The notes: a model not told the origin generated them from the sequence alone. A DNA stretch of 64,000 nt from IMGVR_UViG_3300036770_003657:335797-399796, one strand, 5' to 3'; numbered from the stretch's first letter, positions 2,339 through 52,581 are shown. Program-made: numbers and translations.

Positions 2339-3880
2339 TTATACTGCTCCTTGAGGTTGTGTTGTAGTAATAGGTTGTGGAGCTACTGGTTGTGGAGCTA
2401 TAGGTTGATTTGAAGTTACAGATCCAGGAATTCTAGTGCTTTGACCTTTTGTTAATTTTGGTTTAAGTTGAGGAATACGTCTTTCTAATTCATCTATTAT
2501 GTCTTTTGTAGGAAGTTTTTCAACAATAATAAGTTTCATTGTTGTGTCAATAATCTTATGTAAAATCCTTTCATTATTGATATTCCTTAATTTAGCTAAC
2601 TTTTGAGCCCAAGGAATAAGTTTTTCTACAAAATCGTCACTCTGTATATCTTTTGGCTTCTTAGCAAACTTACCTAATTCTTTGGCACTAACTTCACCGC
2701 CGAATGTTGTCGGCTGTACATAGATTTGTGGATACGCGGTTCTACCAGGATCATTTACCCCAGTCAAATAGATACTGTCTGCATGGAATCTTAATCCTTG
2801 GCTTATTAGATCTTCTGCACTATTATACCAAATTAAATTCCTATCATAAAGGTTGACAAATAGTACACCATCATCATGTTTAAGTGCCATATAGTTGTTA
2901 AAACTGGCCTGTGAATAGGCTTGTTTAGCTGCCCCTAGATCTCCATCTTGTATGGTCAATAAAATTTCTTTTATATTTCTTTTTAATCTAGCAGTATATT
3001 CTTTTCTTTCTGTTTGAGCGTTACCAAATATTTTTTCAACAACACTTTTTAATTTCTGCATAAAAGTACTTTGAATTTCACCAGTAACATTTTGATGAAA
3101 CTCTATAGCCTGTGTAAGACTTAGCCCTGATTTAGTTAATTGAAGTTTAAAACCTTTTCTATTTTTATAAGGTCCAGTACCTCGTACAAAGTCATTTAAA
3201 TCACGAGCAGCAGGATCCCAACCTTCAATTGGCCTAACTTCCTGATCTCCAAAACGAGCTGATGCTTTACTGGATTTTTCCTTGCCAGTTTCAGGATCTA
3301 CAGTGGTGGTCATACTGGCTGTTTTTACTTCAACTTGCCACATCCTACCATTCCATTCTGCTTTAAGGTCACCCTTACCATCATTAGGTTTGTTTATAGT
3401 TTTACTAAAAACATTTAGGGCAAATTCGCCTTTACCATGTCCCAATGTAGCTACATTCATTAGAGTATCCACTAACTCAGTGGTGATTGGGTTAGATCCG
3501 TAAGTATTAAAAACTTCTTCAAAGGAAACAGACTCACCTGAAAATAAAGCGTCTTTGTTTACAATTTTATCCTGTTTCCATAAACTAAACAGTTGATTAC
3601 GTTCTTCAGGAGTGCCATCTATGCTAAGAATATATCTTGTCAGATCTTTTTGTACTGCATTGACTGCAGGGTCATTAATACTTTGTAGGTCCTTTGCAAT
3701 TAAGCCTTTTCTTCCACCAGCATTTACATCACGTAATAAATCCTCAATCTCTCTTAAGGTTTTAATAGTGGCATCATCAGAAGGAAGGATTTTGATTTGG
3801 CTCGCAATCTTCTCCTTCCAATTATCCACAGCATCAGCTGCCATTTCAGCCAATAGTAATCTAAATTCTTTATATCGCAT
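2339..3880 (-). CDS. Putative head-associated protein with a PD-(D/E)XK nuclease-like motif
   Basis: 513 aa; N-terminus MRYKEFRLLLAE; GKGE...GD...EVK spacing; TAAATA at 3888-3893. Confidence 0.5.
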   Translation of the reverse strand: MRYKEFRLLLAEMAADAVDNWKEKIASQIKILPSDDATIKTLREIEDLLRDVNAGGRKGLIAKDLQSINDPAVNAVQKDLTRYILSIDGTPEERNQLFSLWKQDKIVNKDALFSGESVSFEEVFNTYGSNPITTELVDTLMNVATLGHGKGEFALNVFSKTINKPNDGKGDLKAEWNGRMWQVEVKTASMTTTVDPETGKEKSSKASARFGDQEVRPIEGWDPAARDLNDFVRGTGPYKNRKGFKLQLTKSGLSLTQAIEFHQNVTGEIQSTFMQKLKSVVEKIFGNAQTERKEYTARLKRNIKEILLTIQDGDLGAAKQAYSQASFNNYMALKHDDGVLFVNLYDRNLIWYNSAEDLISQGLRFHADSIYLTGVNDPGRTAYPQIYVQPTTFGGEVSAKELGKFAKKPKDIQSDDFVEKLIPWAQKLAKLRNINNERILHKIIDTTMKLIIVEKLPTKDIIDELERRIPQLKPKLTKGQSTRIPGSVTSNQPIAPQPVAPQPITTTQPQGAV

Positions 3881-3890
3881 AGTTAAGTAT

Positions 3891-4574
3891 TTACCTTAAC
3901 TCTGGAAACAAACACTCCTGTATGAATATACGTACATCTTCCTCATTCAATCCCAAACTGGTCATTACCTTAGGCGTATGTGGGTTCATCTTTTGGTTCT
4001 GTGCGTAAAAATTCTGTTGTTCGCTAGTATTAAGTACAGTGTTATTAGTTTCACCTACTGTGCTTAAGTAATGATCTACACCCTTGCGAGCCATTTCAAA
4101 GATTTGATCTAGTTCGTGTTCGTCCTGTACATTACCTGCTGCCACCATGCTCTTGCTGAATATACGGGTAGCCCAATCTGGTAGTGCTCTTTCCTTACGC
4201 CATTCCATCTTACTTACTTCGTTGGCAAACCATTCACACATAGGATGATTAGCATCCCCTGTAGGACTATAATCATAAAAACAGCCGGTAATTTTATTCT
4301 TACCGGCTATAACATCAAATCCAAAGATTGGGGCAGGGTTGTGTGTATGTGGAAATACGCAACAATGCATCATCCACAATCCCTTTTTCTCTCTAGCATC
4401 TACAACATCTACGTGAGCCCTACGATATGCTTCACTGGTCCAAACACGGTTTACCCATCCTGGTTGATTAAACCTATCCATACCTGGTTCAAATGCTTCA
4501 GTACCAGTGCGTTCAAAACTTTGCTCTAATAGGTGTTGTACATTAATTAGAGCGTCCCAAACTTTACTCTCCAT
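3891..4574 (-). CDS. pcyX: Ferredoxin-dependent bilin reductase, PcyX/PcyA type
   Basis: RRAHVDVVDAR, LWMMHCCVFP, PIFGFDVIAG and NQKMNPHT motifs; directly downstream of and overlapping heme oxygenase. Confidence 0.88.
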   Translation of the reverse strand: MESKVWDALINVQHLLEQSFERTGTEAFEPGMDRFNQPGWVNRVWTSEAYRRAHVDVVDAREKKGLWMMHCCVFPHTHNPAPIFGFDVIAGKNKITGCFYDYSPTGDANHPMCEWFANEVSKMEWRKERALPDWATRIFSKSMVAAGNVQDEHELDQIFEMARKGVDHYLSTVGETNNTVLNTSEQQNFYAQNQKMNPHTPKVMTSLGLNEEDVRIFIQECLFPELR

Positions 4575-5112
4575 TGTACAAATCCCTCATCATCTTAATG
4601 GCCCATTCAAAGGCCACACGAGCCTCATCACCTAACTCATCTGTGAGTTCGGCTCTGATTGCTACTTTAAGTTGATCAGGATTAGTAAACTCATAGAACT
4701 TGCCACTGCTAATGTGTGCTACTTGTTTCTTAATAATTAAGCCACCATTTAGGTCACCCATATGACGACAATACAAATGTGCCTTAAGTAAATGTCTACG
4801 TTCTAGGTCATTGGTTAGCTGGACCAAATAGTCATGATAGGCTAGGGTCTGTGGTAGCCAAACAAACTTGTGCTCTGGCCCAGCTAATTCCATAAAATCT
4901 TGATATATTGCTGGTAAACGCTCAATACCCTGTATGTTAGCAAAGTGTCCTAACATACGATTACCAAATTCAATTGGTCCGTATATGGGCAATAATTGGT
5001 ATAGATAATTTGCGTAATCTTCCTTACTAATTTTACCACTTAGTAATAGTTTAGCAAATTTAGTTGTTTCCGCCTCGTGATGTAAATCCTTAGTAATCTC
5101 TCTTAAACTCAT
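4564..5112 (-). CDS. hemO: Heme oxygenase
   Basis: TKDLHHEAE (proximal His) and HLYCRHMGDLNGG (distal helix). Confidence 0.92.
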   Translation of the reverse strand: MSLREITKDLHHEAETTKFAKLLLSGKISKEDYANYLYQLLPIYGPIEFGNRMLGHFANIQGIERLPAIYQDFMELAGPEHKFVWLPQTLAYHDYLVQLTNDLERRHLLKAHLYCRHMGDLNGGLIIKKQVAHISSGKFYEFTNPDQLKVAIRAELTDELGDEARVAFEWAIKMMRDLYNGE

Positions 5113-5438: not shown

Positions 5439-5444
5439 ATAAGT

Positions 5445-5462
5445 GGGGGAGTTTCCTCCCCC
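5445..5462 (-). other. GC-rich hairpin with GAAA loop between hsp20 and clpS (stabiliser or weak terminator)
   Basis: GGGGGAG-GAAA-CTCCCCC on the minus strand; no clear U-tract. Confidence 0.5.
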
Positions 5463-5468
5463 TGTTGA

Positions 5469-5906: not shown

Positions 5907-5910
5907 AAAA

Positions 5911-5970: not shown

Positions 5971-5975
5971 AGGCA

Positions 5976-7853
5976 TTAGGCTGCGTTTTTAACTTCTGTA
6001 AAATCTACATCCGTAATGTCCTTATCCTGTTGTTGAGGCTGTGCGTTTTTAGCAGTGTAAATAACCTGTGCCGCAGCAGCTAGGTCACTCATCTTCTGTG
6101 TTATTGATTCCTTAGTACCTGTAGCAATCTCAGTTAATAGTGCTGTGATACTAGTTTCAATCTTATCTTTATCATCACTGCTAATCTTATCCTCAACTTC
6201 CTTCAAATCCTTACGAATTTGATGGACTTGTCCGTCTACGCTATTCCTTAAATCAACAATCTCACGCTGTTTGCGATCTTCCTCAGCGTTGGCTTCAGCT
6301 TCACGGATCATTTTTTCAATTTGATCCTTACTTAAACCACCATCTGATTTAATAGTGATCTTGTTTTCTTTGCCTGTAGTCTTATCCTTGGCACTAATTT
6401 TCATAATACCATTAGCATCTACATCAAAGGTTACTTCAATTTGAGGCATACCTCTGGGCTGTGGCATAATACCTTCTAGGTTAAACTCGCCTAGTAGTTT
6501 ATTATCCTTTACAAACTCACGTTCACCTTGGAATACCTTAATAGTGACAGCAGGTTGATTGTCATCTGCTGTGCTAAATGTTTGACTAGCCTTTGTGGGA
6601 ATAGTAGTATTCTTTTGAATGATCTTGGTCATTACTCCACCAAGTGTTTCAATACCAAGACTCAATGGTGTAACATCTAATAACAATACGTCATTGCGTT
6701 CGCCGCTTAGTACAGCACCTTGTACAGCAGCACCCACTGCCACTGCTTCATCTGGGTTAACATCCTTACGTGGCGCTTTACCAAATAACTTTTCTACAGC
6801 GTCCTGTACCTTGGGCATACGTGTCATACCACCAACTAAAATAATTTCATCAATATCTGCTGGTGTAACTCCTGCGTCTTTCATAGCAGTACGACAGGGA
6901 GCAATGCTACGTTCAATTAAATCTTCAACCAATGCTTCTAATTTAGCACGAGTAAGTTTTAGATTCATATGTTTTGGCCCGCTAGCATCAGCAGTAACAT
7001 ATGGTAGATTAATATCTGTTTGTTGGCTGCTACTTAATTCAATTTTAGCCTTTTCCGCTGCCTCTTTAAGACGTTGTAGAGCTAATACATCTTTAGTCAA
7101 GTCAATACCTTGATCCATCTTAAAAGTATCAACTAAGTAATCCATAATACGTTGGTCGAAGTCTTCACCACCTAAGAAAGTATCACCATTAGTGCTTAGT
7201 ACTTCAATTTGTTTGTCATTACCCAAGTTAGCAATTTCAATAATGCTAATATCAAAAGTGCCACCGCCCAAGTCATATACTGCTACCTTACGATCTTTTT
7301 TATCCGTCTTATCAACGCCGTAAGCCAACGCGGCAGCAGTCGGTTCATTAATGATGCGAAGAACTTCCAAGCCAGCAATACGGCCAGCATCTTTAGTAGC
7401 TTGACGCTGACTATCATTAAAATAGGCCGGAACAGTAATAACAGCTTGGGTAACATCATAACCTAAATAATCTTCAGCAGTCTTTTTCATTTTACGCAAT
7501 ACTTCTGCGCTGATTTGAGGAGGTGCTAACTCCTTGCCCTGTGCCTTAACCCAAGCATCACCACTTGAGTTTTCAATGATTTCATAGGGCATTAGATCTA
7601 AATCTTTTTGTACAGCCTCTTCTTTAAACTTACGTCCAATTAAGCGTTTGGCTGCGTATACTGTATTCTTTGGATTAGTAACAGCTTGTCTTTTAGCACT
7701 GGCACCTACAAGAATTTCTTCATCTGTATAGGCTACTATACTGGGAGTAGTACGTGCTCCTTCGCTGTTTTCAATTACTTTGGGATTGCCGCCTTCTATA
7801 ATGGCGACGCAACTGTTAGTAGTACCGAGATCGATACCGATTACCTTACTCAT
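5976..7853 (-). CDS. dnaK: Chaperone DnaK (Hsp70)
   Basis: [35 protein letters not shown]; 625 aa; betaproteobacterial-like segments ([25 protein letters not shown]). Confidence 0.98.
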
Positions 7854-7858
7854 ATGTA

Positions 7859-7913: not shown

Positions 7914-7915
7914 TT

Positions 7916-10603: not shown

Positions 10604-10612
10604 ATCAAATAT

Positions 10613-16006: not shown

Positions 16007-17482
16007 CTATTCCGCATCAAAAAAGAACATATGCCATAATCTACAATTGTCCTTGTTATAGCCAAAATATTCTTTAGCTGCGTGTATCAACCCACCATCA
16101 TAGATCACAAGTCGATTATATACATTGCCTACTACATCAACGTCTTCAAATCCAGTACCATCTAAAAATGTAATTTGATTAAAACAATCCATAATCCTAG
16201 GATCACTACAATGACGTACACGATTAGTTTTGTAAGCACTCATTCTTGTGCCTGCACTATAGGGAGCGTTTGGTGTAAGATATATTAGACCAGCAAACTT
16301 TTGAAAATCAGTGTGCCAAGTTATAGCTTCACCTGCTACATTATGTTGAAATCTGCCATTCATTCCATGGCTTTCCCAATTGGTTATACGCATACCCATA
16401 ACCTGTTCAAACTTTTCTTTCATTCCTGGAAAGAAAAACTGCTGTCTAGTACGTTTACCTATAAAACCAGGATCATCAAAGTAATGTTGATTTAAAGCGA
16501 ATTCACGCACACTATCGGGATCATCATAAAAATCCTCTACAATCCATAACCTAGGCTTTTTGTTAGCTCCCATAGTTACTCCACCCATCTGTGGGAAACT
16601 CCATACCAAGGATTGATGAGCGCCTTCTAATGTAGGTAAAAAGAACTCATTATTTCTAACAACTTCAGGTAACTTATCTGTATTGTAGGGTTTAAGATGA
16701 TGATCACGTACTGCTACAGGATCTTGACCATTGTCCGTAGGAACAAATGTGTTCATATAACTTTTACGTAATTCGTGCCCTAATGCGCTATGTTCACTGT
16801 AAAAGTGGCTATCTTCGTACATCTTCCACTTAAGTTCACGATTTCCCATCCATTGGAATTTCCAGCCTGCGTCCTGTATTTCGTTATTGTCTTGTAGGTA
16901 CATTCCAGGGAAGTCTACCCAAGTCCATTTACCGTCTCTAGTCTTTTCTCTACGAAAGTCGCTTAAACTATATATGGTAAAGTGTTCACTGCGACAAACA
17001 TAACCCTGACGATTTTGTACCATCTCTCCACTTTCTGCCTGTAATTGCCAAGCACTATGTCCGCTTAGATGTGCTAATGGTAATCTAATATTATGTACTG
17101 GACTATTATAGCTTATACTACGATAATAATCAACAAACCCATAATTAGGTATTTCATCTTCGTAGTTTACAAATACTATGCTATTTTGTGGTATGTGTTT
17201 ACGCATACAATCAAACAGCCAATCGCTGCGTTCTTCTACGCTATGTCCAAACTTTGGTAAATCGTTACGTTTAACTTGAACAATTTGAATTTTATCTGTT
17301 GGTAATCCAAGGTCAACTATATCTTGTTCTAGGGTAAAAGGTTTATCTTTCCCTGATAGTGCATAATCGGCTTCTGCTATAATAAACAAATCAAAGCGAT
17401 CATACAAGTATTCAATTCTTAATTTCAATAATTCCTTAACGCCAGTATAAACTGAGCAATTTACAACTGGTTTATCGTACAT
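16007..17482 (-). CDS. Fusion of a GT17-like glycosyltransferase N-domain and a DUF6445 / 2OG-Fe(II) oxygenase-like C-domain
   Basis: ELLKLRIEYLYDRFDLFIIAEA...SG..KP; IVEDFYDDPDSVREFAL...G.RT, HTD, NRLVIYDG..IH. Confidence 0.6.
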   Translation of the reverse strand: MYDKPVVNCSVYTGVKELLKLRIEYLYDRFDLFIIAEADYALSGKDKPFTLEQDIVDLGLPTDKIQIVQVKRNDLPKFGHSVEERSDWLFDCMRKHIPQNSIVFVNYEDEIPNYGFVDYYRSISYNSPVHNIRLPLAHLSGHSAWQLQAESGEMVQNRQGYVCRSEHFTIYSLSDFRREKTRDGKWTWVDFPGMYLQDNNEIQDAGWKFQWMGNRELKWKMYEDSHFYSEHSALGHELRKSYMNTFVPTDNGQDPVAVRDHHLKPYNTDKLPEVVRNNEFFLPTLEGAHQSLVWSFPQMGGVTMGANKKPRLWIVEDFYDDPDSVREFALNQHYFDDPGFIGKRTRQQFFFPGMKEKFEQVMGMRITNWESHGMNGRFQHNVAGEAITWHTDFQKFAGLIYLTPNAPYSAGTRMSAYKTNRVRHCSDPRIMDCFNQITFLDGTGFEDVDVVGNVYNRLVIYDGGLIHAAKEYFGYNKDNCRLWHMFFFDAE

Positions 17483-17821: not shown

Positions 17822-18706
17822 TTACCATGTAGTAGTATTTTTACCACTATCTCCTATTATTTGTCCAATACTATATGCAGCAGGAGCAGCTACAAATTCC
17901 ACTGGATTATTATGATGTTGTGTTACCCAATCTCTTATTCTAGTCCAGTCTTGAAATAAGCTTTGTGTAGTTGTATATGTTCTTTTAGTACCTTTATTAG
18001 TCGTTAATTCGTAGCTATATGTAATTGTGTAAGTTAAATCATTGGTCCAATAATATATTTCAGATTCAGGTCTTGTTGGACATTCAGTTATATCATACTC
18101 TGTTAAAATTCTAGGAGTAGTGTGTGGAGCAGAGTCAGAAGTAGTAGCACTTGATAAATGATCAACATATTTCATTGTTCCAGTCGGTATCATATCATAA
18201 AATCCACTGGCTTCACAATTATCTGCATTGATAGTCAATGTAATATGATCTAAAAATCTTGGGCGTCTTGGCATACTAATATCAGTACATTGTACTTCAA
18301 TAATTTCTTCATCTTCTTCATCATTATACCATAAGTAAGGTATAGGATCATAATCTGGATTTGGTACTTCTCCTGCATAATTGCCATCACCATCATATGC
18401 AGCTATAGTTTGGGGTAAAAAATGTGCTGGGTTAGGGATATGTGGTGGTTTTACTATTGATGCTCCAACTGTAAAACTAAAATTAGCATAAATTTCTACA
18501 CTGCCTCCAGAACCAGACCAATTAAAAGTATTTCTATAGTCATAGCTATAACTAACACTGTCTCCAGGTTTATCATTACTAGAAGGAGTAAATGTTTCTG
18601 GAGCACGCCACTCTGCTCCATTTTTAAATGGAAAAATAAATGGAAAATCTGTATTAGGTGGAGGAGGTGACTGTATCAGTGTATAGCCATCTATTATCAC
18701 ACTCAT
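17822..18706 (-). CDS. Hypothetical protein, probably baseplate/tail-associated
   Basis: 294 aa, coupled between the giant fibre and PAAR genes. Confidence 0.6.
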   Translation of the reverse strand: MSVIIDGYTLIQSPPPPNTDFPFIFPFKNGAEWRAPETFTPSSNDKPGDSVSYSYDYRNTFNWSGSGGSVEIYANFSFTVGASIVKPPHIPNPAHFLPQTIAAYDGDGNYAGEVPNPDYDPIPYLWYNDEEDEEIIEVQCTDISMPRRPRFLDHITLTINADNCEASGFYDMIPTGTMKYVDHLSSATTSDSAPHTTPRILTEYDITECPTRPESEIYYWTNDLTYTITYSYELTTNKGTKRTYTTTQSLFQDWTRIRDWVTQHHNNPVEFVAAPAAYSIGQIIGDSGKNTTTW

Positions 18707-37588: not shown

Positions 37589-37912
37589 TCAACGTCTTCG
37601 GTTAAGTGCGCTCTTTGCCATACTTTTTGTAAGATTGCCTTTTCCAGGATCACCACCTGACTGTTGTGGTTCTTCACTGGCTCTTGTCTTAAGACGTACA
37701 CCTTGTGGGTCAAAGCTACAAATTTCAGCAAAGCTTGGATTGGCTTCAAAGCGTGGACCAAATTTGCTAGGGCTGTCTATACGTTGCCCTAGCACATTTT
37801 GTGTTATATCTCCAAAAGCGGCCCAGTTAATAACTTCTGGGTTGTCTGCACTATCAGCAGAGTTACGCTTGGCTACTAGTAAATCAAATAACTTATCTTG
37901 GTTTTCAGTTAC
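37589..37912 (-). CDS. 107-codon C-terminal extension of the upstream gene, probably reached by -1 frameshift
   Basis: Open -1 frame begins at the A9 run, has two TAG stops just upstream and no ATG/GTG/TTG for its first 39 codons. Confidence 0.65.
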   Translation of the reverse strand, partial: VTENQDKLFDLLVAKRNSADSADNPEVINWAAFGDITQNVLGQRIDSPSKFGPRFEANPSFAEICSFDPQGVRLKTRASEEPQQSGGDPGKGNLTKSMAKSALNRRR

Positions 37913-38853
37913 TTTTTTTTTGTAAGTATGGCAGCAAGTCTACGGCTATAAGCAGCAGTTTCTCTCATAGCACGACCTGCTGGTTCCGCTGCCCCTGCTG
38001 CACCAAGTTCATCTTCCATACCTGCTGCTGCTTCTGGAGCACCTACTTCTGGAGCACCCATACCACCCATACCCATGCCTGCGCCACCTGGAGCTTCTGT
38101 GCCTGTTAATACTGCTACTGCCTGTGCTAGTGCTTGACGATTTTTCTCTAAGGCCAAATATATTTCATCTAGAGCAGGACGAACTGTTTGTTCAAAACTG
38201 CTACTAATATCGGTGCCCATCTCATCTCTTATAGAGTCTAATAAGTCTAACATGGCTTCGGACTTCATGCTTGCTACATCCTCTAGCCAGCCTGTGATAC
38301 GATCTGTCATGTCCTTAGCGGCCATGATTAACTCTGCCTTTTCTTCTTCGCCTTCTGTTAACATAAGGTCACGTACTACACCTTTAGCACTGGTCTCATC
38401 TAGGTCGTAACGAATGATTAGTTCACTAATGATTTCCTCGCCAGCATCACGTTCCATCATAAGACGTTGACGAGCATTGGTAGTCCATTGTTGTGGTAGT
38501 TTATGACTGCGTAGTCTACGCTGTGCCATATGATATTCTTTTAAGTTCTTTGCCTTGCGCTCTTTCTTTGCCTTCTTGTCTTTATCTTCTTCGCCTTTCA
38601 TTTCACGCTCAGCAATTTCTTGATTAATTACATCAAGCATTCTTTGATTCTTTTGGTATCTGTGATCACCTAATACACTGTCATAACTGTTGCTACTTTC
38701 AAATTGGCTTTGACTAGTACGTAGTTTATTACGAGCATCATGTAGTTGCTCCATTGTAAACTTTTCTAAGACTAGTTTATATCCAAACTGTTTACCTAGG
38801 TTTTCGTTTAATTTACGACTTGTAATGGGTTTTTGAAGATCATTGATATTCAT
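37909..38853 (-). CDS. Acidic helical protein, possibly prohead core / scaffold-like
   Basis: 314 aa; several L/I-x-E sites; Gly/Ala/Met-rich tail; ends ACA AAA AAA AAG TAA; TAAATA upstream. Confidence 0.6.
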   Translation of the reverse strand: MNINDLQKPITSRKLNENLGKQFGYKLVLEKFTMEQLHDARNKLRTSQSQFESSNSYDSVLGDHRYQKNQRMLDVINQEIAEREMKGEEDKDKKAKKERKAKNLKEYHMAQRRLRSHKLPQQWTTNARQRLMMERDAGEEIISELIIRYDLDETSAKGVVRDLMLTEGEEEKAELIMAAKDMTDRITGWLEDVASMKSEAMLDLLDSIRDEMGTDISSSFEQTVRPALDEIYLALEKNRQALAQAVAVLTGTEAPGGAGMGMGGMGAPEVGAPEAAAGMEDELGAAGAAEPAGRAMRETAAYSRRLAAILTKKK

Positions 38854-38878
38854 ACCGAGTTCCTAATATTTAAGATAT

Positions 38879-39346
38879 TTATCTAAATGAGTGATTAAAC
38901 GCCTGCGTTATTTCGTTGCGATACCACTGGCTTCTGTCTCTGGATTGCTCATATCTCCATAAGAACACATCCCTTTTAACTTCATCTTTGGTCTTGCCAA
39001 ATAATTCTTTAAAATGTACGCTGTCTGTATAACTACTCCAATAACGTTGATCTAGGTCTTTGGTTCTACTTAGTTCCATTATTCTATTATGTTTGTGCTG
39101 TTTAGCCGCTATTAATGCGCTGCTTTTTAAGTAGAAGGTGTATATGCTGTTCTTATAGCGTTTACCGTGTTGTATAAGATCCCATTGGCCATTACGATTT
39201 TTTCTTATTACATAGTTATAATAGCCTACACTGCCATCACTTAGTACCACTGTGGGCATAATGTTTTTAACTTCACCAAGTAATCGTTCAAACCTTTTAA
39301 CTGCTTTATCTATTGACATTGGCCACAACCTTTGGATTAACCTCAC
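38879..39346 (-). CDS. Hypothetical protein
   Basis: 155-aa ORF in a late operon; start uncertain. Confidence 0.65.
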   Translation of the reverse strand: MRLIQRLWPMSIDKAVKRFERLLGEVKNIMPTVVLSDGSVGYYNYVIRKNRNGQWDLIQHGKRYKNSIYTFYLKSSALIAAKQHKHNRIMELSRTKDLDQRYWSSYTDSVHFKELFGKTKDEVKRDVFLWRYEQSRDRSQWYRNEITQAFNHSFR

Positions 39347-39509
39347 CTATCTTGATCAGTAGGCTTTTACGTATTAGGCCTTCTGCTACTTGCTGATCTC
39401 GCTCAGGTAACATACTTAGCAGAGTAGGCCTAGTCAGCTTGGTCAATAAGGCACGCTCCTCATTAGTTGTCCAAATTTCAAAACTACGTACTAGTTCGTT
39501 TATTTTCAT
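39306..39509 (-). CDS. Hypothetical protein with MKINEL N-terminus
   Basis: 67 aa; ATGA overlap. Confidence 0.7.
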   Translation of the reverse strand: MKINELVRSFEIWTTNEERALLTKLTRPTLLSMLPERDQQVAEGLIRKSLLIKIGEVNPKVVANVNR

Positions 39510-40390
39510 AGTCCAGCTAATTTTTTAAGGTTGATAACATCCTGGCTTTGATTAGTATTGGCCTTTGGCTGTATGTTAGATACTCTGCGGGCTAGTGCGA
39601 CTATATCATTGGTCTCGCCGACAAATTTTTTGTCCTGTGTAATCTGTTGCATGGCCTTACGCATCATGGCCTTCTCTCTATTCTTATCGTTATAGCCTGT
39701 AGGCACATAATCTTCACGAGGTAAGCCCTGTTGGAATTTAGCAAAGGCTCTTGGATCAACTCCCATACGTTGAGCACTGGCATCTGTGCCCATTAAATGT
39801 GCTATATCATCTGGATCAGCTGCTTGTCCAACCATTTTAGTAATTCCCTTTTGACCGTTATTAAAAGGAGTATCTGTAGATATAGATGCGTTTTTGTTTA
39901 CTCTATAAGTACCACCGGTGTGTACAGGTTGTCCTTGAGCATTTTTAGTCATTGACATATCTATAGGCCCGGCTTGATATCTATCCGTAGTGTTACCTGC
40001 CTTATCAGTCCTTCTACTCAATCCTGCTATTGGTGTAGTTGCTTGGGGCTCATCAAATATTTCCTCTGTTGCTGCTTGATCCTGTGGTTTAGGATTAGGA
40101 GTTAATGGGCTTCCTGGCTGACTGGGAGCATCCGTTCCACCAGCCATGTTTACTTCACTGCCTGGCTGTAATTGCGGCATTGGTGATGGTGCATTTGGAT
40201 CAGCTGTAGGGTTTACCATTACGCCTTGTGGCCCTTGCTGTATAGTGTTAGGATTTTTACTAGGATCAAATGTAGTCTGTGTTTGGGGATTATTAGGATC
40301 CTGTAGTGTTACCTTATTAGGCGTAGCCTGTATTACCTTCATCTTAGTCATTTGCTGAGGTTGTTGCCCAGTTACTTCAAATATTTTCAT
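39506..40390 (-). CDS. Pro/Gln-rich putative internal head protein
   Basis: MKIFEV N-terminus; C-terminal DVINLKKLAGL. Confidence 0.55.
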   Translation of the reverse strand: MKIFEVTGQQPQQMTKMKVIQATPNKVTLQDPNNPQTQTTFDPSKNPNTIQQGPQGVMVNPTADPNAPSPMPQLQPGSEVNMAGGTDAPSQPGSPLTPNPKPQDQAATEEIFDEPQATTPIAGLSRRTDKAGNTTDRYQAGPIDMSMTKNAQGQPVHTGGTYRVNKNASISTDTPFNNGQKGITKMVGQAADPDDIAHLMGTDASAQRMGVDPRAFAKFQQGLPREDYVPTGYNDKNREKAMMRKAMQQITQDKKFVGETNDIVALARRVSNIQPKANTNQSQDVINLKKLAGL

Positions 40391-44763: not shown

Positions 44764-45461
44764 CTTAGTTTGGCCAAACCTAATAGCATTAGCATTTTAA
44801 GATATACATAGCCTATGTCTATTTCCCACCACTTTTCGCTGAGCTTGACACTGCTGGGCTTGTTATGGTGGTTGTTGTGGAGTTCCTCTCCTCCGATAAT
44901 GAATCCAAACGGTATAATATTTCTACTGCGATCAGAAGTTGAACTATTGCGATAGCCCCAATAATGCCCAATACCATTGATAACGCCCGCTGCCCAAAAT
45001 GGTATCCACGCCATCTGAATAAGCCAAATAAGAATACCCCAGCCATTAAAACATAAAGTGTTGATGATAAGAAGTGATAGTATGCCATGACAAGTATATT
45101 TACTATAAATGTTGCGTTCTACCCAATCATCAGGAGTACCTACTCCATATTGATCTATCATTGTACGATCTCTACTGGCTATATCATATAACCAAGCACC
45201 TTTAAACAGTACATTGCATATACCGTATACATGTGGACTATGTGGATCATTAAACTGATCTGTGAACCTATGATGCTTACGATGTATGGCTACCCATTCC
45301 TTAGTATTCATACCTGTTGTAAACCATAACCAAAAACGCATAAAGTGACTGACCACAGGATTGAACACTATACCCTTATGTGCCTGTCCACGATGTAAAA
45401 ATAATGTTACACATACTATAGTAATATGTGTAGCCGTTAAAAGATATAATAGTTCAATCAT
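44760..45461 (-). CDS. desA: Fatty acid (acyl-CoA delta-9-like) desaturase
   Basis: His boxes HRGQAH, HRKHH and HNNHH; TM segments. Confidence 0.92.
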   Translation of the reverse strand: MIELLYLLTATHITIVCVTLFLHRGQAHKGIVFNPVVSHFMRFWLWFTTGMNTKEWVAIHRKHHRFTDQFNDPHSPHVYGICNVLFKGAWLYDIASRDRTMIDQYGVGTPDDWVERNIYSKYTCHGILSLLIINTLCFNGWGILIWLIQMAWIPFWAAGVINGIGHYWGYRNSSTSDRSRNIIPFGFIIGGEELHNNHHNKPSSVKLSEKWWEIDIGYVYLKMLMLLGLAKLR

Positions 45462-46351
45462 AAGTGGTGTTTCACTCCAAGCTTGGCACCTAACATGTTC
45501 AAACTCATTAGGTATTTCTTTTGACTACTAGCAGCACGCTCTGGATCCCAACTGCTTTTATCTCCAGTATAGTTTTCATAATTGTCAGCATACTTAACCA
45601 TCATGGCTAATGGATTACCACTGTTAATTATAGCTTCTATATTTTGTCTATAGGTTAGGCTCTTGTTCTTTGTTAGTAGGCCCACTGCCTGTATGACCTG
45701 TGGTGTAAATTCTAACTTGGCCAGCTCATCTATACCAATATGTGTATCTTCTACCACATCGTGTAGGAAGGCTGTTTTCACTGCATCACTGTTAAACCTA
45801 CTGCCAAATATCTTCTTACCAGTTAAGGCCACTGCTCTAGGATGACGCCAATATGGTAGACTACCATATAGTTGATCACCGTGTGCTTGTTTAATAAACT
45901 TAAGAGTTTGTGCTACATTGAGTTCGTTAAGAGGTTCTATACTTTCAGCAAGTAGAGCAGCATGTTGAAATAGCTCTGGGTTCATCTTACCCCATAGTCT
46001 CATTATTACAGCAGCCTTAGCATTAGCTTCATTCTCATGTTCACTACCATCCTCTCCACTATCTGGAGTGAGCACTCCCATACTATCTTGTTTATAGTGG
46101 ACTAGTTCATGTGCTAGAGTTCTAAGTACATCCATAATGTGTCTATTTCCCACATTAAGCTCTATACGTCCACCCATATAGCCACCAAAGCTACGACGAC
46201 TACTGGCCAGTTTGGGATCACTATATAATTTAATCTTAGGTAGGTCGTTCAATTTTATGTGTTTACTAGCGAACCTTAAAAAGTTTTGAATAATAGACTT
46301 GGTTTCATCATCTACCCTAGGTGGTTTTTCTTTTAGCTCTTTAAAGTTCAT
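45458..46351 (-). CDS. Two-domain protein: HExxH zincin-like domain plus RelA/SpoT-type HD hydrolase
   Basis: TLAHELVHYKQ; PYWRHPRAVA...AFLHDVVEDT...VKYADNYEN. Confidence 0.75.
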   Translation of the reverse strand: MNFKELKEKPPRVDDETKSIIQNFLRFASKHIKLNDLPKIKLYSDPKLASSRRSFGGYMGGRIELNVGNRHIMDVLRTLAHELVHYKQDSMGVLTPDSGEDGSEHENEANAKAAVIMRLWGKMNPELFQHAALLAESIEPLNELNVAQTLKFIKQAHGDQLYGSLPYWRHPRAVALTGKKIFGSRFNSDAVKTAFLHDVVEDTHIGIDELAKLEFTPQVIQAVGLLTKNKSLTYRQNIEAIINSGNPLAMMVKYADNYENYTGDKSSWDPERAASSQKKYLMSLNMLGAKLGVKHHL

Positions 46352-46784: not shown

Positions 46785-46792
46785 CTAGTACT

Positions 46793-47989
46793 ATGATAGA
46801 TAAAATCCACTTCAAACGCTTAATCGGCGACTTAAAAGATTCGGGCAAATATCGTGTGTTCAACAATATAGTCCGTGAAAAAGGTAAATTTCCAAACTCA
46901 ATATGGTACGGTCCATACGCAATCAAGAACATCGTTAACTGGTGCTCTAACGATTACCTCGGAATGGGTCAGCACAAAGTTGTCATAGACGCAATGCACA
47001 CTGCACTAGATCAAACTGGTTCAGGGTCAGGTGGTACTAGAAACATCGGCGGGACCAGTACTTATCACGTTGCTTTGGAAACAGAACTAGCATTCTTACA
47101 TCGTAAGGATCGTGCTTTATTATTCAGCAGTGCTTATGTGGCTAATGAATGGAGTCTTATAGCACTGAGTAAAATTGTACCTAATATACACTTTGTGAGC
47201 GATAGTAAAAATCACAATAGTCTAATAGTAGGTATCAGTCATAGTAAGGCTCCGAAAACCGTGTTCACACACAACGATATGGAAAACCTTGAAAGCATAC
47301 TTAAAGCAGTTAGAGATGCTGGAGAGACTCCTTGCGTAGTGTTTGAAAGCGTATACAGTATGGATGGCGATGTTAGCACGATGACTGAAATATGTGACCT
47401 TGCTGACAAATACGAAGCCATTACCTATATTGATGAAGTACACGCAGTAGGCCTATATGGTGAACGTGGTGCAGGTAAGTTGGAAGAACTTAAACTACAA
47501 CATCGTGTGGACATTGTAAATGGTACATTAGGTAAAGCATATGGTGTACAAGGCGGATATATAGCGGCAGATAGTGAAGTGGTAGATGCTATACGCAGTG
47601 TAAGTCATGGCTTTATCTTTACTACAAGTATGAGCCCTGTTAGTTGTGCTGGTGCATTATCAGCAGTTAAATTTCTTAAAGAACATAATGAAATAAGAGA
47701 AAAGCATCAGGAGCGTGCCAATAGACTAAAAACATTATTGAAACAAAATGATCTTCCACTTATGAATACTAGTACACATATTGTGCCAGTGCTTGTAGGC
47801 AATGCTGTTCGTGCTAAGGCAATGAGCGATGCCCTACTAGAAGATCATAACATATATGTTCAACCTATAAATTATCCTACAGTGGCAGTAGGCACAGAGA
47901 GACTACGTTTTGCTCCAACTCCATATCATGATGATGGTATGATGGAGAAGTTAATTGTGGGATTGAAGGATATTTTTAGTCGGATTTAA
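46793..47989 (+). CDS. hemA: 5-aminolevulinate synthase (C4/Shemin pathway)
   Basis: [56 protein letters not shown] (PLP Lys), [15 protein letters not shown]. Confidence 0.93.
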
Positions 47990-48848: not shown

Positions 48849-48859
48849 AGTAATATTTA

Positions 48860-50145: not shown

Positions 50146-50633
50146 GAGTCCTGCCTTACATTGAATGGTATTGCTCTACGCTTATTTACCAATTCAAAGT
50201 ATGCTGGCTTGTAGGGCTTGACCTTAGGCTTCATCCTAGTATCACTGCCCTTGGCTGCATTGCAGGGTCCACAGGCTGTGACAGTGTTATCGAACACAGT
50301 CTTGCCACCTTGGCTCACAGGCTTAACATGATCCAATGTACAGTCTTTTTTCTGTAGGTGTTTGTCACAGTATAGGCAAGTATAATTGTCTCTTAGGAAC
50401 ACATTGCTCTTACTGAATCTTACATAGCTTTTTGGCTTAGTATATTCTCTGAGCATGATAATACTGGGCACAAAGGTTTCCCAATTAACACTGCGTACAA
50501 TCCAATTCTCATACCATTCAATCACAGAAGCCTTATCCAATACCATATAGCGGATTGACTCTTGCCAATTAATTGTGCTAAGAGGAAGATAGTTTAAAGG
50601 TTGTCCGTCTGCGTTAAGAACTAGTGTGTCCAT
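50121..50633 (-). CDS. HNH endonuclease
   Basis: RDNYTCLYC, TLDHVKP..QGG, TACGPCNAAKG; TTGACT-17-TATAAT at 50656-50684. Confidence 0.92.
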   Translation of the reverse strand: MDTLVLNADGQPLNYLPLSTINWQESIRYMVLDKASVIEWYENWIVRSVNWETFVPSIIMLREYTKPKSYVRFSKSNVFLRDNYTCLYCDKHLQKKDCTLDHVKPVSQGGKTVFDNTVTACGPCNAAKGSDTRMKPKVKPYKPAYFELVNKRRAIPFNVRQDSWLAYINQ

Positions 50634-50676
50634 AATTTACTACTCAAAAAATTGTATTATACTACCGGTCCTGTGT

Positions 50677-51225
50677 TTAGTCAAATATTGATTGGACGAA
50701 ATCGTTGCTACTACGTTCTAAACTTTGGAGCCATTGATCCTTAAGGTCGTGATGAAATACCAAATCATAATTAGCACTGCTTATTAACCAACTAGCATTA
50801 CGATCTCTAGGTGGAGCACCATCATATTCTTCTTGTAGTTGTTCTGGGCTCCAACCACATAGGCCTAAGAATAACCTAAAGTGTTTAGGAGCATCACCTT
50901 CACCCAATCTTGGCAATAGGTCATCACTGCTACTGATACTAAACTCTTTATTAATACGCATGGTATTAGATCCTGCCCATTCACTGCTATGCAACATGGT
51001 AAGTGCCTTAATATTAACAGGACCGCCCACATATATATAACCTGGTATGTTTAATCTTTCACCTATTTGCTCTGTAAACTCAGCAGTACTAACGCTACTG
51101 CGTTTGTTCAAAAGTAAACCCATACTGCCGTTTACGTGATCTTCTGTGACAAAAATAACACTTTTATACCAAAATCCTGTTTTCATTTTTGGTGGGGCAA
51201 TTAATAATTTTCCGGTAAAATCCAT
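50677..51225 (-). CDS. yqgE: YqgE/AlgH (DUF179) family protein
   Basis: LLIAPP, SVIF..E..GSMGLLLNK, GGPV, LGLCGWSPEQLQEE. Confidence 0.88.
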   Translation of the reverse strand: MDFTGKLLIAPPKMKTGFWYKSVIFVTEDHVNGSMGLLLNKRSSVSTAEFTEQIGERLNIPGYIYVGGPVNIKALTMLHSSEWAGSNTMRINKEFSISSSDDLLPRLGEGDAPKHFRLFLGLCGWSPEQLQEEYDGAPPRDRNASWLISSANYDLVFHHDLKDQWLQSLERSSNDFVQSIFD

Positions 51226-51227
51226 TG

Positions 51228-52049
51228 TTATCCTATATCACTTATATTAGAAATAAGAGCTTGAGCAAAGGCTATTCTTTGATTTTTATGTAATCCTGCA
51301 CTTCTTTCATAATGTTTATCAAAAATAATTGCTGCTTCCTCTGCTGTCCTAGCTGTACTTAGCATTGATGCTGCTTTCTTTTCAGTATTTTCTAATTCCC
51401 ATTGTACAAATGCTAATTGCTCGCCTAAACTACTCTGTCTAATATCCTTACCAAATGCTTTTCTAAATAGCTGTTGCCTATCTGGATGCCACTGAGCAAT
51501 CCCGTATGCTCTACCTTTATCACCTACAGCATCAATTTGTAAATCCCTTCCGCTCTCTGCCTGTAGATTACCCACTATACCTGCTGCTTGTTCTGGACTC
51601 CATCCTTTACTGATAAAATATTTTACTGCATCTTTAGTATTTTTTGCAGAGTCTAATGATGCCACACTGGCCTTGGCACGTGCTCTAGTATCTTTATCTA
51701 TTCTACTATTTGGACCTTGTTTTACTTGGCTAACAACCTTTCCTGGTTTGACATCTGCTTCAGTACTTTTGACAAAACTAATCTTTTGATCTTTTAATTT
51801 TTTATTAATTAAGTCAATCATGGCCTTGTCTGGACTACCATCTTGAGTAAGAGCATTATCCTTTTCAAATTGTTTTATAGCATTATTAGTTTCTGGACCC
51901 CTGAACCCATCTACTCCATGTATAGGCAACTTATATCCTAGGGCCAATAATGCCTTTTGTAAATCTGCCACTGCTGGACCGCGTGTTCCTCTTGGTACCA
52001 TAATTTGTGAAGTTGATTGTACAAAATCAACAAACTCTTTTAACCTCAT
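51228..52049 (-). CDS. Peptidoglycan-binding domain plus phage tail lysozyme domain
   Basis: VADLQKALLALGY...VDG..GPET..AIKQF; AAGIVGNLQAESG, YGIAQW...R. Confidence 0.88.
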   Translation of the reverse strand: MRLKEFVDFVQSTSQIMVPRGTRGPAVADLQKALLALGYKLPIHGVDGFRGPETNNAIKQFEKDNALTQDGSPDKAMIDLINKKLKDQKISFVKSTEADVKPGKVVSQVKQGPNSRIDKDTRARAKASVASLDSAKNTKDAVKYFISKGWSPEQAAGIVGNLQAESGRDLQIDAVGDKGRAYGIAQWHPDRQQLFRKAFGKDIRQSSLGEQLAFVQWELENTEKKAASMLSTARTAEEAAIIFDKHYERSAGLHKNQRIAFAQALISNISDIG

Positions 52050-52288
52050 TCCCCATTACCTTTCCAAACTGGCAATGGACCTCCATAATTGCCACCTTTG
52101 ACTTTTTTACCTTTAATGCTTTTACGCTTTTTGTTTATGGTAAATTGTTTTTCCGTATCCCTAGCACGAAACCCTTGGCTCTTACAGCTACTTAGTTGGC
52201 TGGCACCTAACTCACTATCAGGCTTAGTACTCTTACATAAGGTTCTGCTGGCTTTACCACTTTCTGTAATAATTTCATCTATTTTCAT
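52046..52288 (-). CDS. Basic hypothetical protein with MKIDEIITE N-terminus
   Basis: Start moved to the ATGA overlap at 52288. Confidence 0.65.
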   Translation of the reverse strand: MKIDEIITESGKASRTLCKSTKPDSELGASQLSSCKSQGFRARDTEKQFTINKKRKSIKGKKVKGGNYGGPLPVWKGNGE

Positions 52289-52581
52289 TCGCAATTCCAA
52301 CGGCGTAAAGCTTTGTTAATTGGGCTATTTGGATCTCTTTTAGTTTTAGCACTAGCATGGGCTTTTTTCATACCTCCCATTCTAGCACAAAAACTACTTC
52401 TACGTTTATCACTTTTACTACCTTTCTTAATCTTACTTGGCTTTGTTGTCACTGCTGTTTTTAACTTACTACCTGGATTTTCCCTACGGTACGCTTTTAC
52501 AGCCTTATTACTCATACCATCAGTATTGTCATTCTTATTGACTTTTTGCCAATCTTCGTTTAAGATTTCGTAGATTTTCAT
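52285..52581 (-). CDS. Basic conserved T4-like hypothetical protein
   Basis: MKIYEILNE; SFCARMGGMKK...SPINKALRRWNC; TAAATA at 52587-52592. Confidence 0.7.
   Translation of the reverse strand: MKIYEILNEDWQKVNKNDNTDGMSNKAVKAYRRENPGSKLKTAVTTKPSKIKKGSKSDKRRSSFCARMGGMKKAHASAKTKRDPNSPINKALRRWNCE

What the first reader, a model, noticed from the sequence alone, without database searches (positions are those of the whole stretch)
2339..52581. Shared N-terminal M-[KRN]-x-x-[ED]-hydrophobic tag resembling the T4 capsid-targeting sequence
Seen in sequence: eight late-region proteins begin MRYKEFRLLLAE (3880), MNINDL (38853), MKINEL (39509), MKIFEV (40390), MNFKELKE (46351), MRLKEF (52049), MKIDEIITE (52288) and MKIYEILNE (52581), several followed by L/I-x-E. 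Established knowledge: T4 internal proteins start MKTYQEFIAE or similar, are packaged into the head and are cleaved after I/L-x-E by gp21. Inference: these are packaged and possibly injected cargo, including a lysozyme, an HD hydrolase and a nuclease-like protein.
Basis: partly seen in the sequence, partly recalled or inferred. Interest (0 to 1): 0.6.

Follow-up and report, generated by a model that had tools for sequence, protein, structure and literature searches.

The report
Capsid-targeting-like tag in jumbo phage
A 400-kb T4-related jumbo phage puts the same short N-terminal tag, closely resembling phage T4's capsid-targeting sequence, on about 15 otherwise unrelated proteins, so its packaged and probably injected proteins could be predicted from sequence alone.

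Summary
All eight N-termini are as quoted, and the motif exceeds chance. Genome-wide, M-[KR]-Φ-x-[ED]-Φ occurs 13 times against 1.4 expected; the 9-residue form M-[KR]-Φ-x-[ED]-Φ-Φ-x-E occurs 6 times against 0.02.

The carriers are not paralogs. The enrichment recurs in two related 364- and 383-kb phage genomes.

In large homolog families the tag is kept while the rest diverges. In the 513-aa family, 109 of 120 members start with it. An invariant Glu follows, and indels fall only between the tag core and Φ-x-E.

The window is the end of a 399,796-bp jumbo phage. It encodes a T4 gp21-type prohead protease and a gp23-type capsid protein, whose propeptide ends in L-A-E. The conserved tag positions match the T4 IPIII residues mapped for targeting (4, 7) and processing (8, 10).

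Best reading: a T4-type capsid-targeting propeptide, one residue shorter, carried by a lysozyme, an HD hydrolase, a kinase-like protein and small basic proteins. Packaging, cleavage and injection are inferred, not shown. "Late region" and "nuclease-like" are not supported.

The parts
2339..3880 (-). 513-aa basic protein of unknown function. Its propeptide-like N-terminus is MRYKEFRLLLAE|MAADAVDN: tag core, spacer, then L-A-E.
   Evidence: N-terminus. No Pfam or PHROG family. In its family, 109 of 120 homologs start with the tag. An invariant E precedes the conserved MAADAVDNLK block, and indels fall only between the tag core and Φ-x-E. TAAATA box 7 nt before the ATG.
37909..38853 (-). 314-aa protein starting MNINDLQKPITSRKLNE|N: tag core with N at position 2, and L-N-E at residues 15-17.
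   Evidence: phrog_14154 'virion structural protein', 1.8e-12. Homolog of 121Q gp27, annotated 'structural protein'. Across 40 distinct N-termini the family pattern M[NQ]I.[DE][LF].KP..S..LNE is near-invariant.
39306..39509 (-). 67-aa basic protein starting MKINELVRSFE. It sits in the position of 121Q gp25.
   Evidence: The G002 ortholog keeps MKINELISNFE. The positional orthologs 121Q gp25 ('structural protein', MRTVLNVHG) and Vibrio MKMVKNVHG lack the motif. This is the weakest member.
39506..40390 (-). 294-aa basic protein starting MKIFEVTGQQ. It has the tag core only; the sole Φ-x-E is I-F-E at residues 3-5.
   Evidence: Sits in the position of 121Q gp24 ('structural protein'). Positional counterparts start MKIFEVDTF (G001), MKVRQVNEG (G002) and MRITELEQLNE (Vibrio). 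No family hit.
45458..46351 (-). 297-aa HD-type phosphohydrolase starting MNFKELKE|KPP (L-K-E at residues 6-8).
   Evidence: phrog_990 metal-dependent phosphohydrolase, 1.2e-27; Pfam HD 0.0016, below cutoff. Its N-terminal region recurs inside tagged proteins of G001 (1389 aa, MNINELDSF) and G002 (236 aa, MKAHQIVDE).
51228..52049 (-). 273-aa peptidoglycan-binding lysozyme starting MRLKEFVDFV (tag core only).
   Evidence: PG_binding_1 1.3e-11 and Phage_lysozyme2 1.4e-32. Relative L060 starts MRFNEFVTS. G002 has a 477-aa protein with another N-domain, the same PG-binding domain, and MRFNEFKIVLKE.
52046..52288 (-). 80-aa very basic protein (pI about 10) with the full 9-residue tag MKIDEIITE|SGK.
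   Evidence: Orthologs start MKIREIISE (L060) and MKVRDIITE (G002): the pattern is kept and the x positions are free.
52285..52581 (-). 98-aa very basic DUF6321 protein (pI about 10.4) with the full tag MKIYEILNE|DWQ.
   Evidence: DUF6321 2.5e-11 starting at residue 18; PHROG models align from residue 6-12 on. Orthologs: MKVSEIISE (G002, 97 aa), MKLNDVILE (G001, 463 aa with DUF6321 at its C-end) and MRAKQFITE|DWNKVN (L124). TAAATA box 5 nt before the ATG.

Best explanation
The shared N-terminus is a capsid-targeting propeptide of the T4 kind, used by a distant jumbo branch of the T4 superfamily (the Rak2/121Q-like supergroup).

It has two parts:
- A core, M-[KR]-Φ-x-[ED]-Φ. By analogy with T4 IPIII residues 4 and 7, this would dock the newly made protein onto the scaffolding core of the prohead.
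- A Φ-x-E site, either directly adjoining (the 9-mer M-K-Φ-x-E-Φ-Φ-x-E) or after a spacer of up to about 8 residues. The phage's gp21-type serine protease would cut here once the shell is closed.

The mature, mostly basic proteins would stay in the head with the DNA and probably leave with it at infection. In this genome about 15 proteins carry the tag. They include a peptidoglycan-binding lysozyme, an HD phosphohydrolase, a kinase-like protein, a 752-aa multidomain protein and several small basic proteins.

Shown here: the tag is real, modular, conserved at the protein level, and co-occurs with a T4-type protease and Φ-x-E maturation sites. Inferred: targeting, cleavage, residence in the head and injection.
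For: Statistics and replication:
- 13 vs 1.4 expected, and 6 vs 0.02 for the 9-mer.
- Replicated in related complete genomes: G001 9 vs 1.7 and 3 vs 0.03; G002 14 vs 2.2 and 6 vs 0.07.

Modularity:
- Carriers share no similarity beyond the tag.
- Homologs with different domain architectures still start with it.
- Of 39 distinct IMG/VR proteins that share only a C-terminal domain, ranging from 64 to 1536 aa, 33 start with it.

Propeptide anatomy: in the 513-aa family, 109 of 120 members have the tag. An invariant E precedes the conserved mature block, and indels fall only between the core and Φ-x-E. A few gene models start exactly at the residue after that E.

Protein-level selection: positions 3, 6 and 7 use ten or more codons with different first bases.

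Machinery:
- PF03420 protease with conserved His and GVSSRG Ser, and conserved Φ-x-E sites near both of its own ends as in T4 gp21.
- The gp23-type capsid protein has ...YLAE|TASAG. This is my manual placement at the position of T4's LTE|AEIGG, and it is conserved as L-x-E in five phages.

Link to the prohead core: the small gene between portal and protease, in T4 gp67's position, begins MILRELF (G000, G002), MLLQEFF (G001), MKLVELFE (Vibrio) and MLKDIFE (121Q).

T4 positive control: the same heptad Φ-x-E-Φ-Φ-x-E starts at residue 4 of ipII, ipIII, gp24 and Alt. In IPIII, residues 4 and 7 act in targeting and 8 and 10 in processing (PMC9026906). These are exactly the conserved tag positions 3, 6 and 7, 9.

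Virion link: window genes 37909-40390 are syntenic with 121Q genes 24-27, three of which (24, 25, 27) are annotated 'structural protein'. The 314-aa protein hits a PHROG 'virion structural protein'.

Charge: 12 of 15 tagged proteins have pI above 8, against 27% of the others (p = 4e-5), like T4 internal proteins.
Against: - No proteomic or N-terminal data exist for this phage or its close relatives, so packaging, cleavage and injection are untested.
- Four of the eight window proteins lack a canonical Φ-x-E close behind the core (39509, 40390 and 52049; in 38853 it lies at residues 15-17).
- 121Q, the cultured relative used here whose record carries structural annotations, shows no enrichment with the original pattern (2 vs 2.1). 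Its orthologs of 39306-39509 and 39506-40390 lack the motif.
- In G001 the tagged proteins are not basic.
- The register differs from T4 by one residue.
- The tagged genes lie among replication and nucleotide-metabolism genes, not in the head module.
- The complex prediction of protease with tag gave no answer.
Confidence: 0.7

Rival explanations
1. The tag is a real, conserved N-terminal signal, but for a destination or partner other than the prohead core. Candidates are recognition by the phage's own DnaK/DnaJ chaperones or a Clp-type protease, targeting to the tail or baseplate, or a regulatory degron. The resemblance to the T4 CTS would then be convergent.
For: The phage encodes DnaK (window 5976-7853) and a DnaJ-like protein. 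Several tags lack a nearby Φ-x-E. A lysozyme with a Phage_lysozyme2 'tail lysozyme' domain could be tail-borne. No direct virion data exist.
Against: The tag's conserved positions coincide with the mapped T4 CTS positions. An invariant Glu with a hydrophobic P3 ends the propeptide in the large family alignment. The same Φ-x-E motif marks the capsid protein and the protease's own ends. The gp67-position head-core gene carries the tag.
Confidence: 0.17
2. The similarity reflects an mRNA-level requirement rather than a peptide signal. Examples would be efficient initiation on leaderless or weakly led transcripts, or an A-rich second codon.
For: Five tagged genes have a TAAATA box 4-7 nt before the ATG and no Shine-Dalgarno sequence. 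AAA is the commonest second codon.
Against: Positions 3, 6 and 7 are filled by I, L, F, V, A or Y through ten or more different codons with all four first bases. Conservation is of residue class, not of bases. Most TAAATA-adjacent genes (24 of 29) have no tag. Tagged genes occur with and without a Shine-Dalgarno sequence. The invariant Glu can lie up to 14 residues downstream, after variable spacers.
Confidence: 0.04
3. The match is chance, composition, or common descent of a duplicated N-terminal exon-like piece with no present function.
For: Some hits are clearly chance, such as a DnaJ starting MNYYDILGV. Two plus-strand early-block ORFs (window 56282 and 57225) have no orthologs in G001/G002.
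Against: No shuffle out of 2000 reaches the observed counts. Three genomes replicate the enrichment. The pattern is kept over 40-50% proteome divergence with free x positions. 109 of 120 and 33 of 39 members of independent families carry it.
Confidence: 0.02

Closest known systems
Capsid targeting sequence (CTS) of phage T4 internal proteins IPII/IPIII (MKTYQEFIAE), and the short N-terminal propeptides of gp24 (MAKINELLRE) and Alt (MELITELFDE), all removed by the gp21 prohead protease
   Same: - It sits at the extreme N-terminus of otherwise unrelated, mostly basic proteins.
- It shares the core Φ-x-E-Φ-Φ-x-E.
- The hydrophobic positions equal T4 residues 4 and 7 (targeting), and Φ-x-E equals residues 8-10 (processing).
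- The phage encodes a gp21-family protease and a gp23-family capsid protein with an L-x-E maturation site.
- An enzyme cargo is present, as Alt is in T4.

   Different: - It is one residue shorter (the heptad starts at residue 3, not 4).
- It is often bipartite, with a variable spacer before Φ-x-E.
- About 15 carriers per genome, against a handful in T4.
- The cargo has no BLASTP similarity to any T4 protein, internal proteins included.
- Many carriers in the clade also end in an ultra-conserved basic 57-aa domain unknown in T4.
- Function here is untested.
Propeptides of head and ejection proteins of phiKZ-like giant phages (phiKZ, 201phi2-1, SPN3US), cut by their prohead protease
   Same: These are giant phages with many internal or ejected head proteins. 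Cleavage is C-terminal to Glu in an x-x-E motif by a protease of related function (PMC5694885).
   Different: There the motif is A/S/G-x-E and most propeptides are longer than 100 residues. Here P3 is L, I or F, and propeptides are 9-17 residues, as in T4.
Inner body of Rak2-like jumbo phages (phAPEC6, 121Q), seen by bubblegram imaging
   Same: Same supergroup by capsid protein (65-70% identity). phAPEC6 and 121Q hold radiation-sensitive proteins embedded in the DNA whose identity is unknown (PMC7247149). The tagged basic proteins are candidates for such internal proteins.
   Different: No link between the tag and inner-body proteins has been shown. 121Q itself shows little tag enrichment.

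Membership tests
T4-type capsid targeting sequence (CTS) propeptide | Short signal (about 10-19 residues) at the extreme N-terminus, starting at Met1 | tested here: met
   All eight begin at the called ATG. No internal Met in the genome carries the 9-mer.
T4-type capsid targeting sequence (CTS) propeptide | Hydrophobic residues at the positions that act in targeting in T4 IPIII (residues 4 and 7) | tested here: met
   Tag positions 3 and 6 are hydrophobic or Ala by the definition of the search pattern. Their fit to the T4 heptad comes, and the functional mapping from PMC9026906.
T4-type capsid targeting sequence (CTS) propeptide | Processing site Φ-x-E (T4 residues 8-10) at the end of the propeptide | tested here: inconclusive
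   Present within 12 residues in 4 of the 8 window proteins, and at residues 15-17 in 38853. In 39509, 40390 and 52049 only the core's own Φ3-x-E5 exists. Across three genomes, Φ-x-E at residues 7-9 occurs in 15 of 44 tags against 1.4% background. It is invariant in the 513-aa family.
T4-type capsid targeting sequence (CTS) propeptide | The same genome encodes a gp21-family (Peptidase_S77) prohead protease with catalytic His and Ser | tested here: met
   PF03420 at 89.7 bits, genome 91575-92201. His74 and GVSSRG align with T4 gp21.
T4-type capsid targeting sequence (CTS) propeptide | Other head proteins of the same phage carry L/I-x-E maturation sites | tested here: met
   The capsid protein has YLAE|TASAG, conserved as L-x-E in G001, G002, Vibrio 2.275.O and 121Q. 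The protease has VVIE near its N-end, and I-x-E near its C-end aligned with T4. This is sequence-level evidence only.
T4-type capsid targeting sequence (CTS) propeptide | The tag is carried by otherwise unrelated proteins (it is modular) | tested here: met
   No BLASTP similarity among carriers. Tag retained across different architectures.
T4-type capsid targeting sequence (CTS) propeptide | Carriers are physically in the head, and the tag is removed by the protease | not testable with these tools
   This needs virion mass spectrometry or N-terminomics. The only indirect support is synteny or homology to 121Q 'structural protein' genes and a PHROG virion protein. The complex prediction gave no answer.
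T4-type capsid targeting sequence (CTS) propeptide | The tag alone suffices to package a foreign protein | not testable with these tools
   This needs a fusion experiment.
T4 internal proteins IPI/IPII/IPIII (sequence family) | Sequence homology of the mature protein to a T4 internal protein | tested here: not met
   BLASTP of the tagged proteins against the T4 proteome gave no hit at E <= 1e-3.
phiKZ-type head or ejection protein propeptides | A/S/G-x-E cleavage motif and long (over 100 aa) propeptides | tested here: not met
   P3 here is L, I or F, and propeptides are 9-17 residues. The phiKZ/SPN3US motif is taken from PMC5694885.

The most novel reading that the evidence does not exclude
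An abundant clade of roughly 350-400-kb environmental jumbo phages may run a modular cargo system. In this reading, any protein placed between the N-terminal CTS-like tag and, often, an ultra-conserved 57-aa basic C-terminal domain is loaded into the prohead, trimmed by the gp21-type protease, held with the DNA and injected. The tag would then read out a sequence-predictable 'ejectome' of 15 or more proteins per phage: kinase-like, GNAT/multidomain, HD hydrolase, lysozyme and histone-like basic proteins. It would also identify the so far unknown inner-body proteins of Rak2-like phages.
Probability: 0.35. Interest if true: 0.8.

Novelty: new variant of a known kind. Interest (0 to 1): 0.62.

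Why it matters
Internal and injected phage proteins are the first phage products to meet host defences; T4's IPI* and Alt are examples. They are usually found only by proteomics of cultured phages.

A recognisable tag would let injected-protein repertoires be predicted directly from metagenomic jumbo-phage genomes. It would point to candidate anti-defence and host-takeover enzymes, here a kinase-like protein, a GNAT-containing multidomain protein, an HD hydrolase and a lysozyme. It would also give testable candidates for the unidentified inner body of Rak2-like phages.

In addition, it would extend the T4 'expression-packaging-processing' idea of CTS fusions to a second, much larger capsid. 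In the library I could search (PubMed Central open subset plus bioRxiv), no paper describes a CTS in Rak2-like or related environmental jumbo phages. That is a limited search, not proof of novelty.

Tried and rejected
- **First locus search with the lysozyme.** This mostly found domain-level relatives. Only L060 was a true relative.
- **Locus search with the kinase-like protein.** One partial locus, not informative for the N-terminus.
- **BLASTP against 121Q, Vibrio 2.275.O and T4.** Only three weak hits, so orthology there rests mainly on synteny.
- **Complex prediction of protease with residues 1-40 of the 80-aa tagged protein.** No answer (score 0.00, controls not run). This is not evidence either way.
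- **Atlas search for the 513-aa protein.** Only unnamed viral clusters. The restriction-enzyme lead at 0.80 is below the useful level, so 'nuclease-like' was dropped.
- **C-terminal 57-aa domain versus DUF6321.** Not significant (E 2.3), and no Pfam hit.
- **Exact T4 late promoter TATAAATA upstream of tagged genes.** None found. Only the shorter TAAATA or ATAAATA box abutting the ATG is present.
- **Protease search in ten further carrier contigs.** No hits, but all are 18-55% complete fragments, so this is uninformative.
- **Paralogy, chance and mRNA-level explanations.** Considered and rejected.
- **Not used.** Read-mapping tools and the large representative protein search; one word-search remained unspent.

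Full report
**1. What the window is**

The window is the last 64 kb of a single 399,796-bp virus record (36.6% G+C). The genome encodes:
- a T4 gp21-type prohead protease (Pfam Peptidase_S77, E 3.5e-26, genome 91575-92201);
- a gp23-type major capsid protein (Pfam Gp23, E 1.1e-98, genome 93329-94507);
- between them and the portal, a T4-like head module: portal, small core protein, acidic protein, protease, scaffold, capsid protein.

The capsid protein is 65-70% identical to those of the Rak2/121Q-like jumbo phages: Escherichia phages 121Q and PBECO4, Vibrio phage 2.275.O and Sinorhizobium phage Phosso. This is therefore a jumbo member of the T4 superfamily.

**2. The observation**

All eight N-termini are exactly as quoted. 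I called 450 genes crudely from ORFs and compared motif counts with column shuffles of residues 2-9.

| Pattern | Observed | Expected |
|---|---|---|
| M[KR]Φ.[ED]Φ | 13 | 1.4 |
| M[KR]Φ.[ED]ΦΦ.E | 6 | 0.02 |

No shuffle out of 2000 reaches any observed count. The 9-mer never occurs at the 2179 internal Met residues.

Controls and further checks:
- The same test is null in T4 (2 vs 1.1) and 121Q (2 vs 2.1), so it is not biased upward.
- The window holds half of the loose hits in 22% of the genes (p = 0.005).
- The carriers show no BLASTP similarity to each other, so they are not paralogs.
- Some loose hits are chance. One is a DnaJ beginning MNYYDILGV.

**3. Replication and conservation**

*Related genomes.* Two related virus records also carry the Peptidase_S77 protease. 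G001 is 364 kb with terminal repeats and is complete. G002 is 383 kb. Their proteomes are only 45% and 53% identical to this one. They show the same enrichment:

| Genome | Core pattern | 9-mer |
|---|---|---|
| G001 | 9 vs 1.7 | 3 vs 0.03 |
| G002 | 14 vs 2.2 | 6 vs 0.07 |

*Orthologs.* Orthologs keep the pattern while the x positions drift:
- MKIDEIITE / MKVRDIITE / MKIREIISE
- MKIREILAE / MKVTEIISE / MRAQEFIAE
- MKIYEILNE / MKVSEIISE / MKLNDVILE

*Different architectures.* Homologs with different domain layouts still start with the tag:
- The DUF6321 domain of window 52285-52581 sits at the C-end of a 463-aa tagged protein in G001.
- The PG-binding domain of the lysozyme sits in a 477-aa tagged protein in G002.

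*Large families.*
- 513-aa protein (2339-3880): 109 of 120 database homologs begin with the tag.
- Their alignment shows a conserved M-R-[FV]-x-[DE]-[FI]-K block, a spacer of 0-5 residues, and a Φ-x-E with an invariant Glu. The conserved mature block MAADAVDNLK follows. Five gene models start exactly at the residue after that Glu.
- 314-aa protein (37909-38853): its family keeps M-[NQ]-I-x-[DE]-[LF] and an L-N-E at residues 15-17 in nearly all of 40 distinct N-termini.

*Level of selection.* Tag positions 3, 6 and 7 are encoded by ten or more different codons with all four first bases. Selection therefore acts on the peptide, not on the mRNA.

**4. Link to the T4 mechanism**

From the T4 genome record itself, ipII and ipIII begin MKTYQEFIAE, gp24 begins MAKINELLRE and Alt begins MELITELFDE. 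All carry the heptad Φ-x-E-Φ-Φ-x-E starting at residue 4. Here the same heptad starts at residue 3.

According to the review PMC9026906, the first 10 residues of IPIII suffice for packaging. Residues 4 and 7 matter for targeting, and residues 8 and 10 for processing. These map exactly onto the conserved tag positions 3 and 6, and 7 and 9.

Supporting features in this genome:
- The protease keeps His and the GVSSRG serine. It also keeps Φ-x-E sites near both ends that align with those of T4 gp21: VVIE/LLIE near the N-end and I-x-E near the C-end.
- The capsid protein has YLAE|TASAG. I placed this by eye at the position of T4's LTE|AEIGG. It is conserved as L-x-E in G001, G002, Vibrio 2.275.O and 121Q.
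- The small gene between portal and protease, in the place of T4's core protein gp67, itself starts with the tag core: MILRELF, MLLQEFF, MKLVELFE, MLKDIFE.
- Tagged proteins are mostly basic. 12 of 15 have pI above 8, against 27% of the rest (p = 4e-5). The same holds in G002 but not in G001.

**5. Link to virions**

Window genes 41490-37909 are syntenic with 121Q genes 23-27, between a helicase and an exonuclease/nrdA. The 121Q record annotates genes 24, 25, 27 and 28 as 'structural protein'.
- The 314-aa protein is a detectable homolog of 121Q gp27 and hits a PHROG 'virion structural protein'.
- 121Q gp28 (MRFRDLTEE) and its Vibrio counterpart (MRYKDLCEG) carry the tag core, but I found no clear counterpart of gp28 in this window.
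- 121Q gp25 and gp24 do not carry it. That weakens the case for window 39306-39509 and, less so, 39506-40390.

phAPEC6 and 121Q have an inner body of unidentified proteins embedded in the DNA (PMC7247149). The Rak2, CBB and phAPEC6 papers I could read do not mention a targeting sequence.

**6. Cargo**

In the window:
- a PG_binding_1 + Phage_lysozyme2 lysozyme (51228-52049);
- an HD-type phosphohydrolase (45458-46351);
- a DUF6321 protein (52285-52581);
- five proteins without a functional family assignment.

Elsewhere in the genome:
- a kinase-like protein, MKITDIISE (phrog_15752, 1.3e-7);
- a 752-aa multidomain protein, MRFKEIITE (DUF6934, weak GNAT);
- a 299-aa protein next to the head module, MKLNELITE;
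- a run of three tagged genes at about 220-222 kb.

No nuclease was found among the eight. The block is not purely 'late': it also holds nrdA/B, an exonuclease, DnaK and an aminotransferase.

**7. Beyond the finding**

The last 57 residues of the 752-aa protein recur in about 197 IMG/VR stretches, on proteins from 64 to more than 1500 aa.
- Of 39 distinct complete carriers, 33 start with the tag, and three of the remaining six start with near-variants.
- The smallest carriers are tag plus domain only: MKIHELLE|NFADGKNPQDKG...
- The domain is a median 53 of 57 residues identical. DNA identity is only 78%, and 25 of 57 codons are changed synonymously. That indicates very strong purifying selection.
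- Carrier contigs I checked are either complete genomes with the protease, or fragments estimated 18-65% complete. The completeness estimates of the ten contigs imply genomes of about 340-420 kb (my arithmetic).

So the tag belongs to one abundant jumbo-phage clade, not to many phage types.

**8. Verdict**

That the tag is a functional, modular N-terminal signal is close to certain. That it is a T4-type capsid-targeting and processing propeptide is the best-supported reading (about 0.7). Packaging, cleavage and injection remain inferences.

The main rival (about 0.17) is a real signal with another partner. mRNA-level and chance explanations are contradicted by the data.

Against known systems this is a variant of the T4 CTS. 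It is one residue shorter, often bipartite, and carried by far more and different cargo. In this clade it is frequently paired with a conserved C-terminal domain. 

Noticed in passing
window ATGs at 1280(+), 3880(-), 14607(-), 41087(-), 41490(-), 52581(-); 29 genes genome-wide: A TAAATA box (often ATAAATA) ends exactly 4-5 nt, sometimes 6-7 nt, before the ATG, with no Shine-Dalgarno sequence. There are 25 cases at 4-5 nt, against about 2-3 per position at distances of 13-30 nt. The same is seen in relatives G001 and G002 but not in 121Q, Vibrio 2.275.O or T4. It looks like a T4-late-type promoter abutting the start codon, which would give leaderless or nearly leaderless mRNAs. Five tagged genes and the gp67-position head gene have it.
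   Followed up: partly
outside the window: genome 285181-287439(-) = L073:5181-7439(-), last 57 residues: A basic C-terminal domain (ENFADGRNPQDKGDSKRHGVPTKAS...AHWMANMKAGKAKK) is a median 53 of 57 residues identical across 40 distinct IMG/VR copies. DNA identity is only 78%. It has no Pfam family. It sits on proteins from 64 to more than 1500 aa that almost all begin with the tag. Its function is unknown; a DNA- or portal-binding module is a guess.
   Followed up: partly
outside the window: genome 220296-220502(-); 121Q 18227-18391; Vibrio 2.275.O 16459-16635; T4 18966-19130 (gp61.1): Small proteins carry a tag or basic N-terminus followed by a copy of the mature N-terminus of the capsid protein. 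For example MRLRELYE|TASGGATSAGNV compares with the capsid protein's YLAE|TASAGTTSAGNV. T4 gp61.1, annotated hypothetical, begins MKTFKEFIKE (CTS-like) and contains TTSGAV. In 121Q and Vibrio these genes lie next to the helicase gene; in T4, gp61.1 lies next to the primase gene.
   Followed up: no
window 18706-31035 (-): A 4109-aa ORF has a Major tropism determinant N-terminal domain at residues 20-57. Oddly, it also has a Phycobilisome-protein (PF00502) match at residues 1732-1812 (E 1.5e-10, above the curated cutoff). It is probably a giant fibre protein. The genome also has a 6682-aa ORF at 103124-123172.
   Followed up: no
window 5976-7853 (-); genome 227928-228770 (-): The phage encodes a full-length DnaK, up to about 70% identical to bacterial-type DnaK and also found in Lak and other huge phages. 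It also encodes a protein whose N-terminus (MNYYDILGV...HPD) looks like a DnaJ J-domain, identified by eye.
   Followed up: no
window 51228-52581 (-): The gene order here is small basic tagged protein, small basic tagged protein, lysozyme. This mirrors T4's ipII-ipIII-e (internal proteins next to the lysozyme gene). It may be coincidence.
   Followed up: no
window 46793-47989 (+): A class I/II aminotransferase (E 3.9e-63) sits alone on the plus strand inside the minus-strand block.
   Followed up: no
window 53400-64000 (+): A dense run of about 30 small plus-strand ORFs looks like an early-gene block. Two of them (56282 MNYDDVKF, 57225 MKPSELLAIAE) match the loose motif. They have no orthologs in G001 or G002, and the one whose pI was computed (56282) is acidic; these are probably chance matches.
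   Followed up: partly
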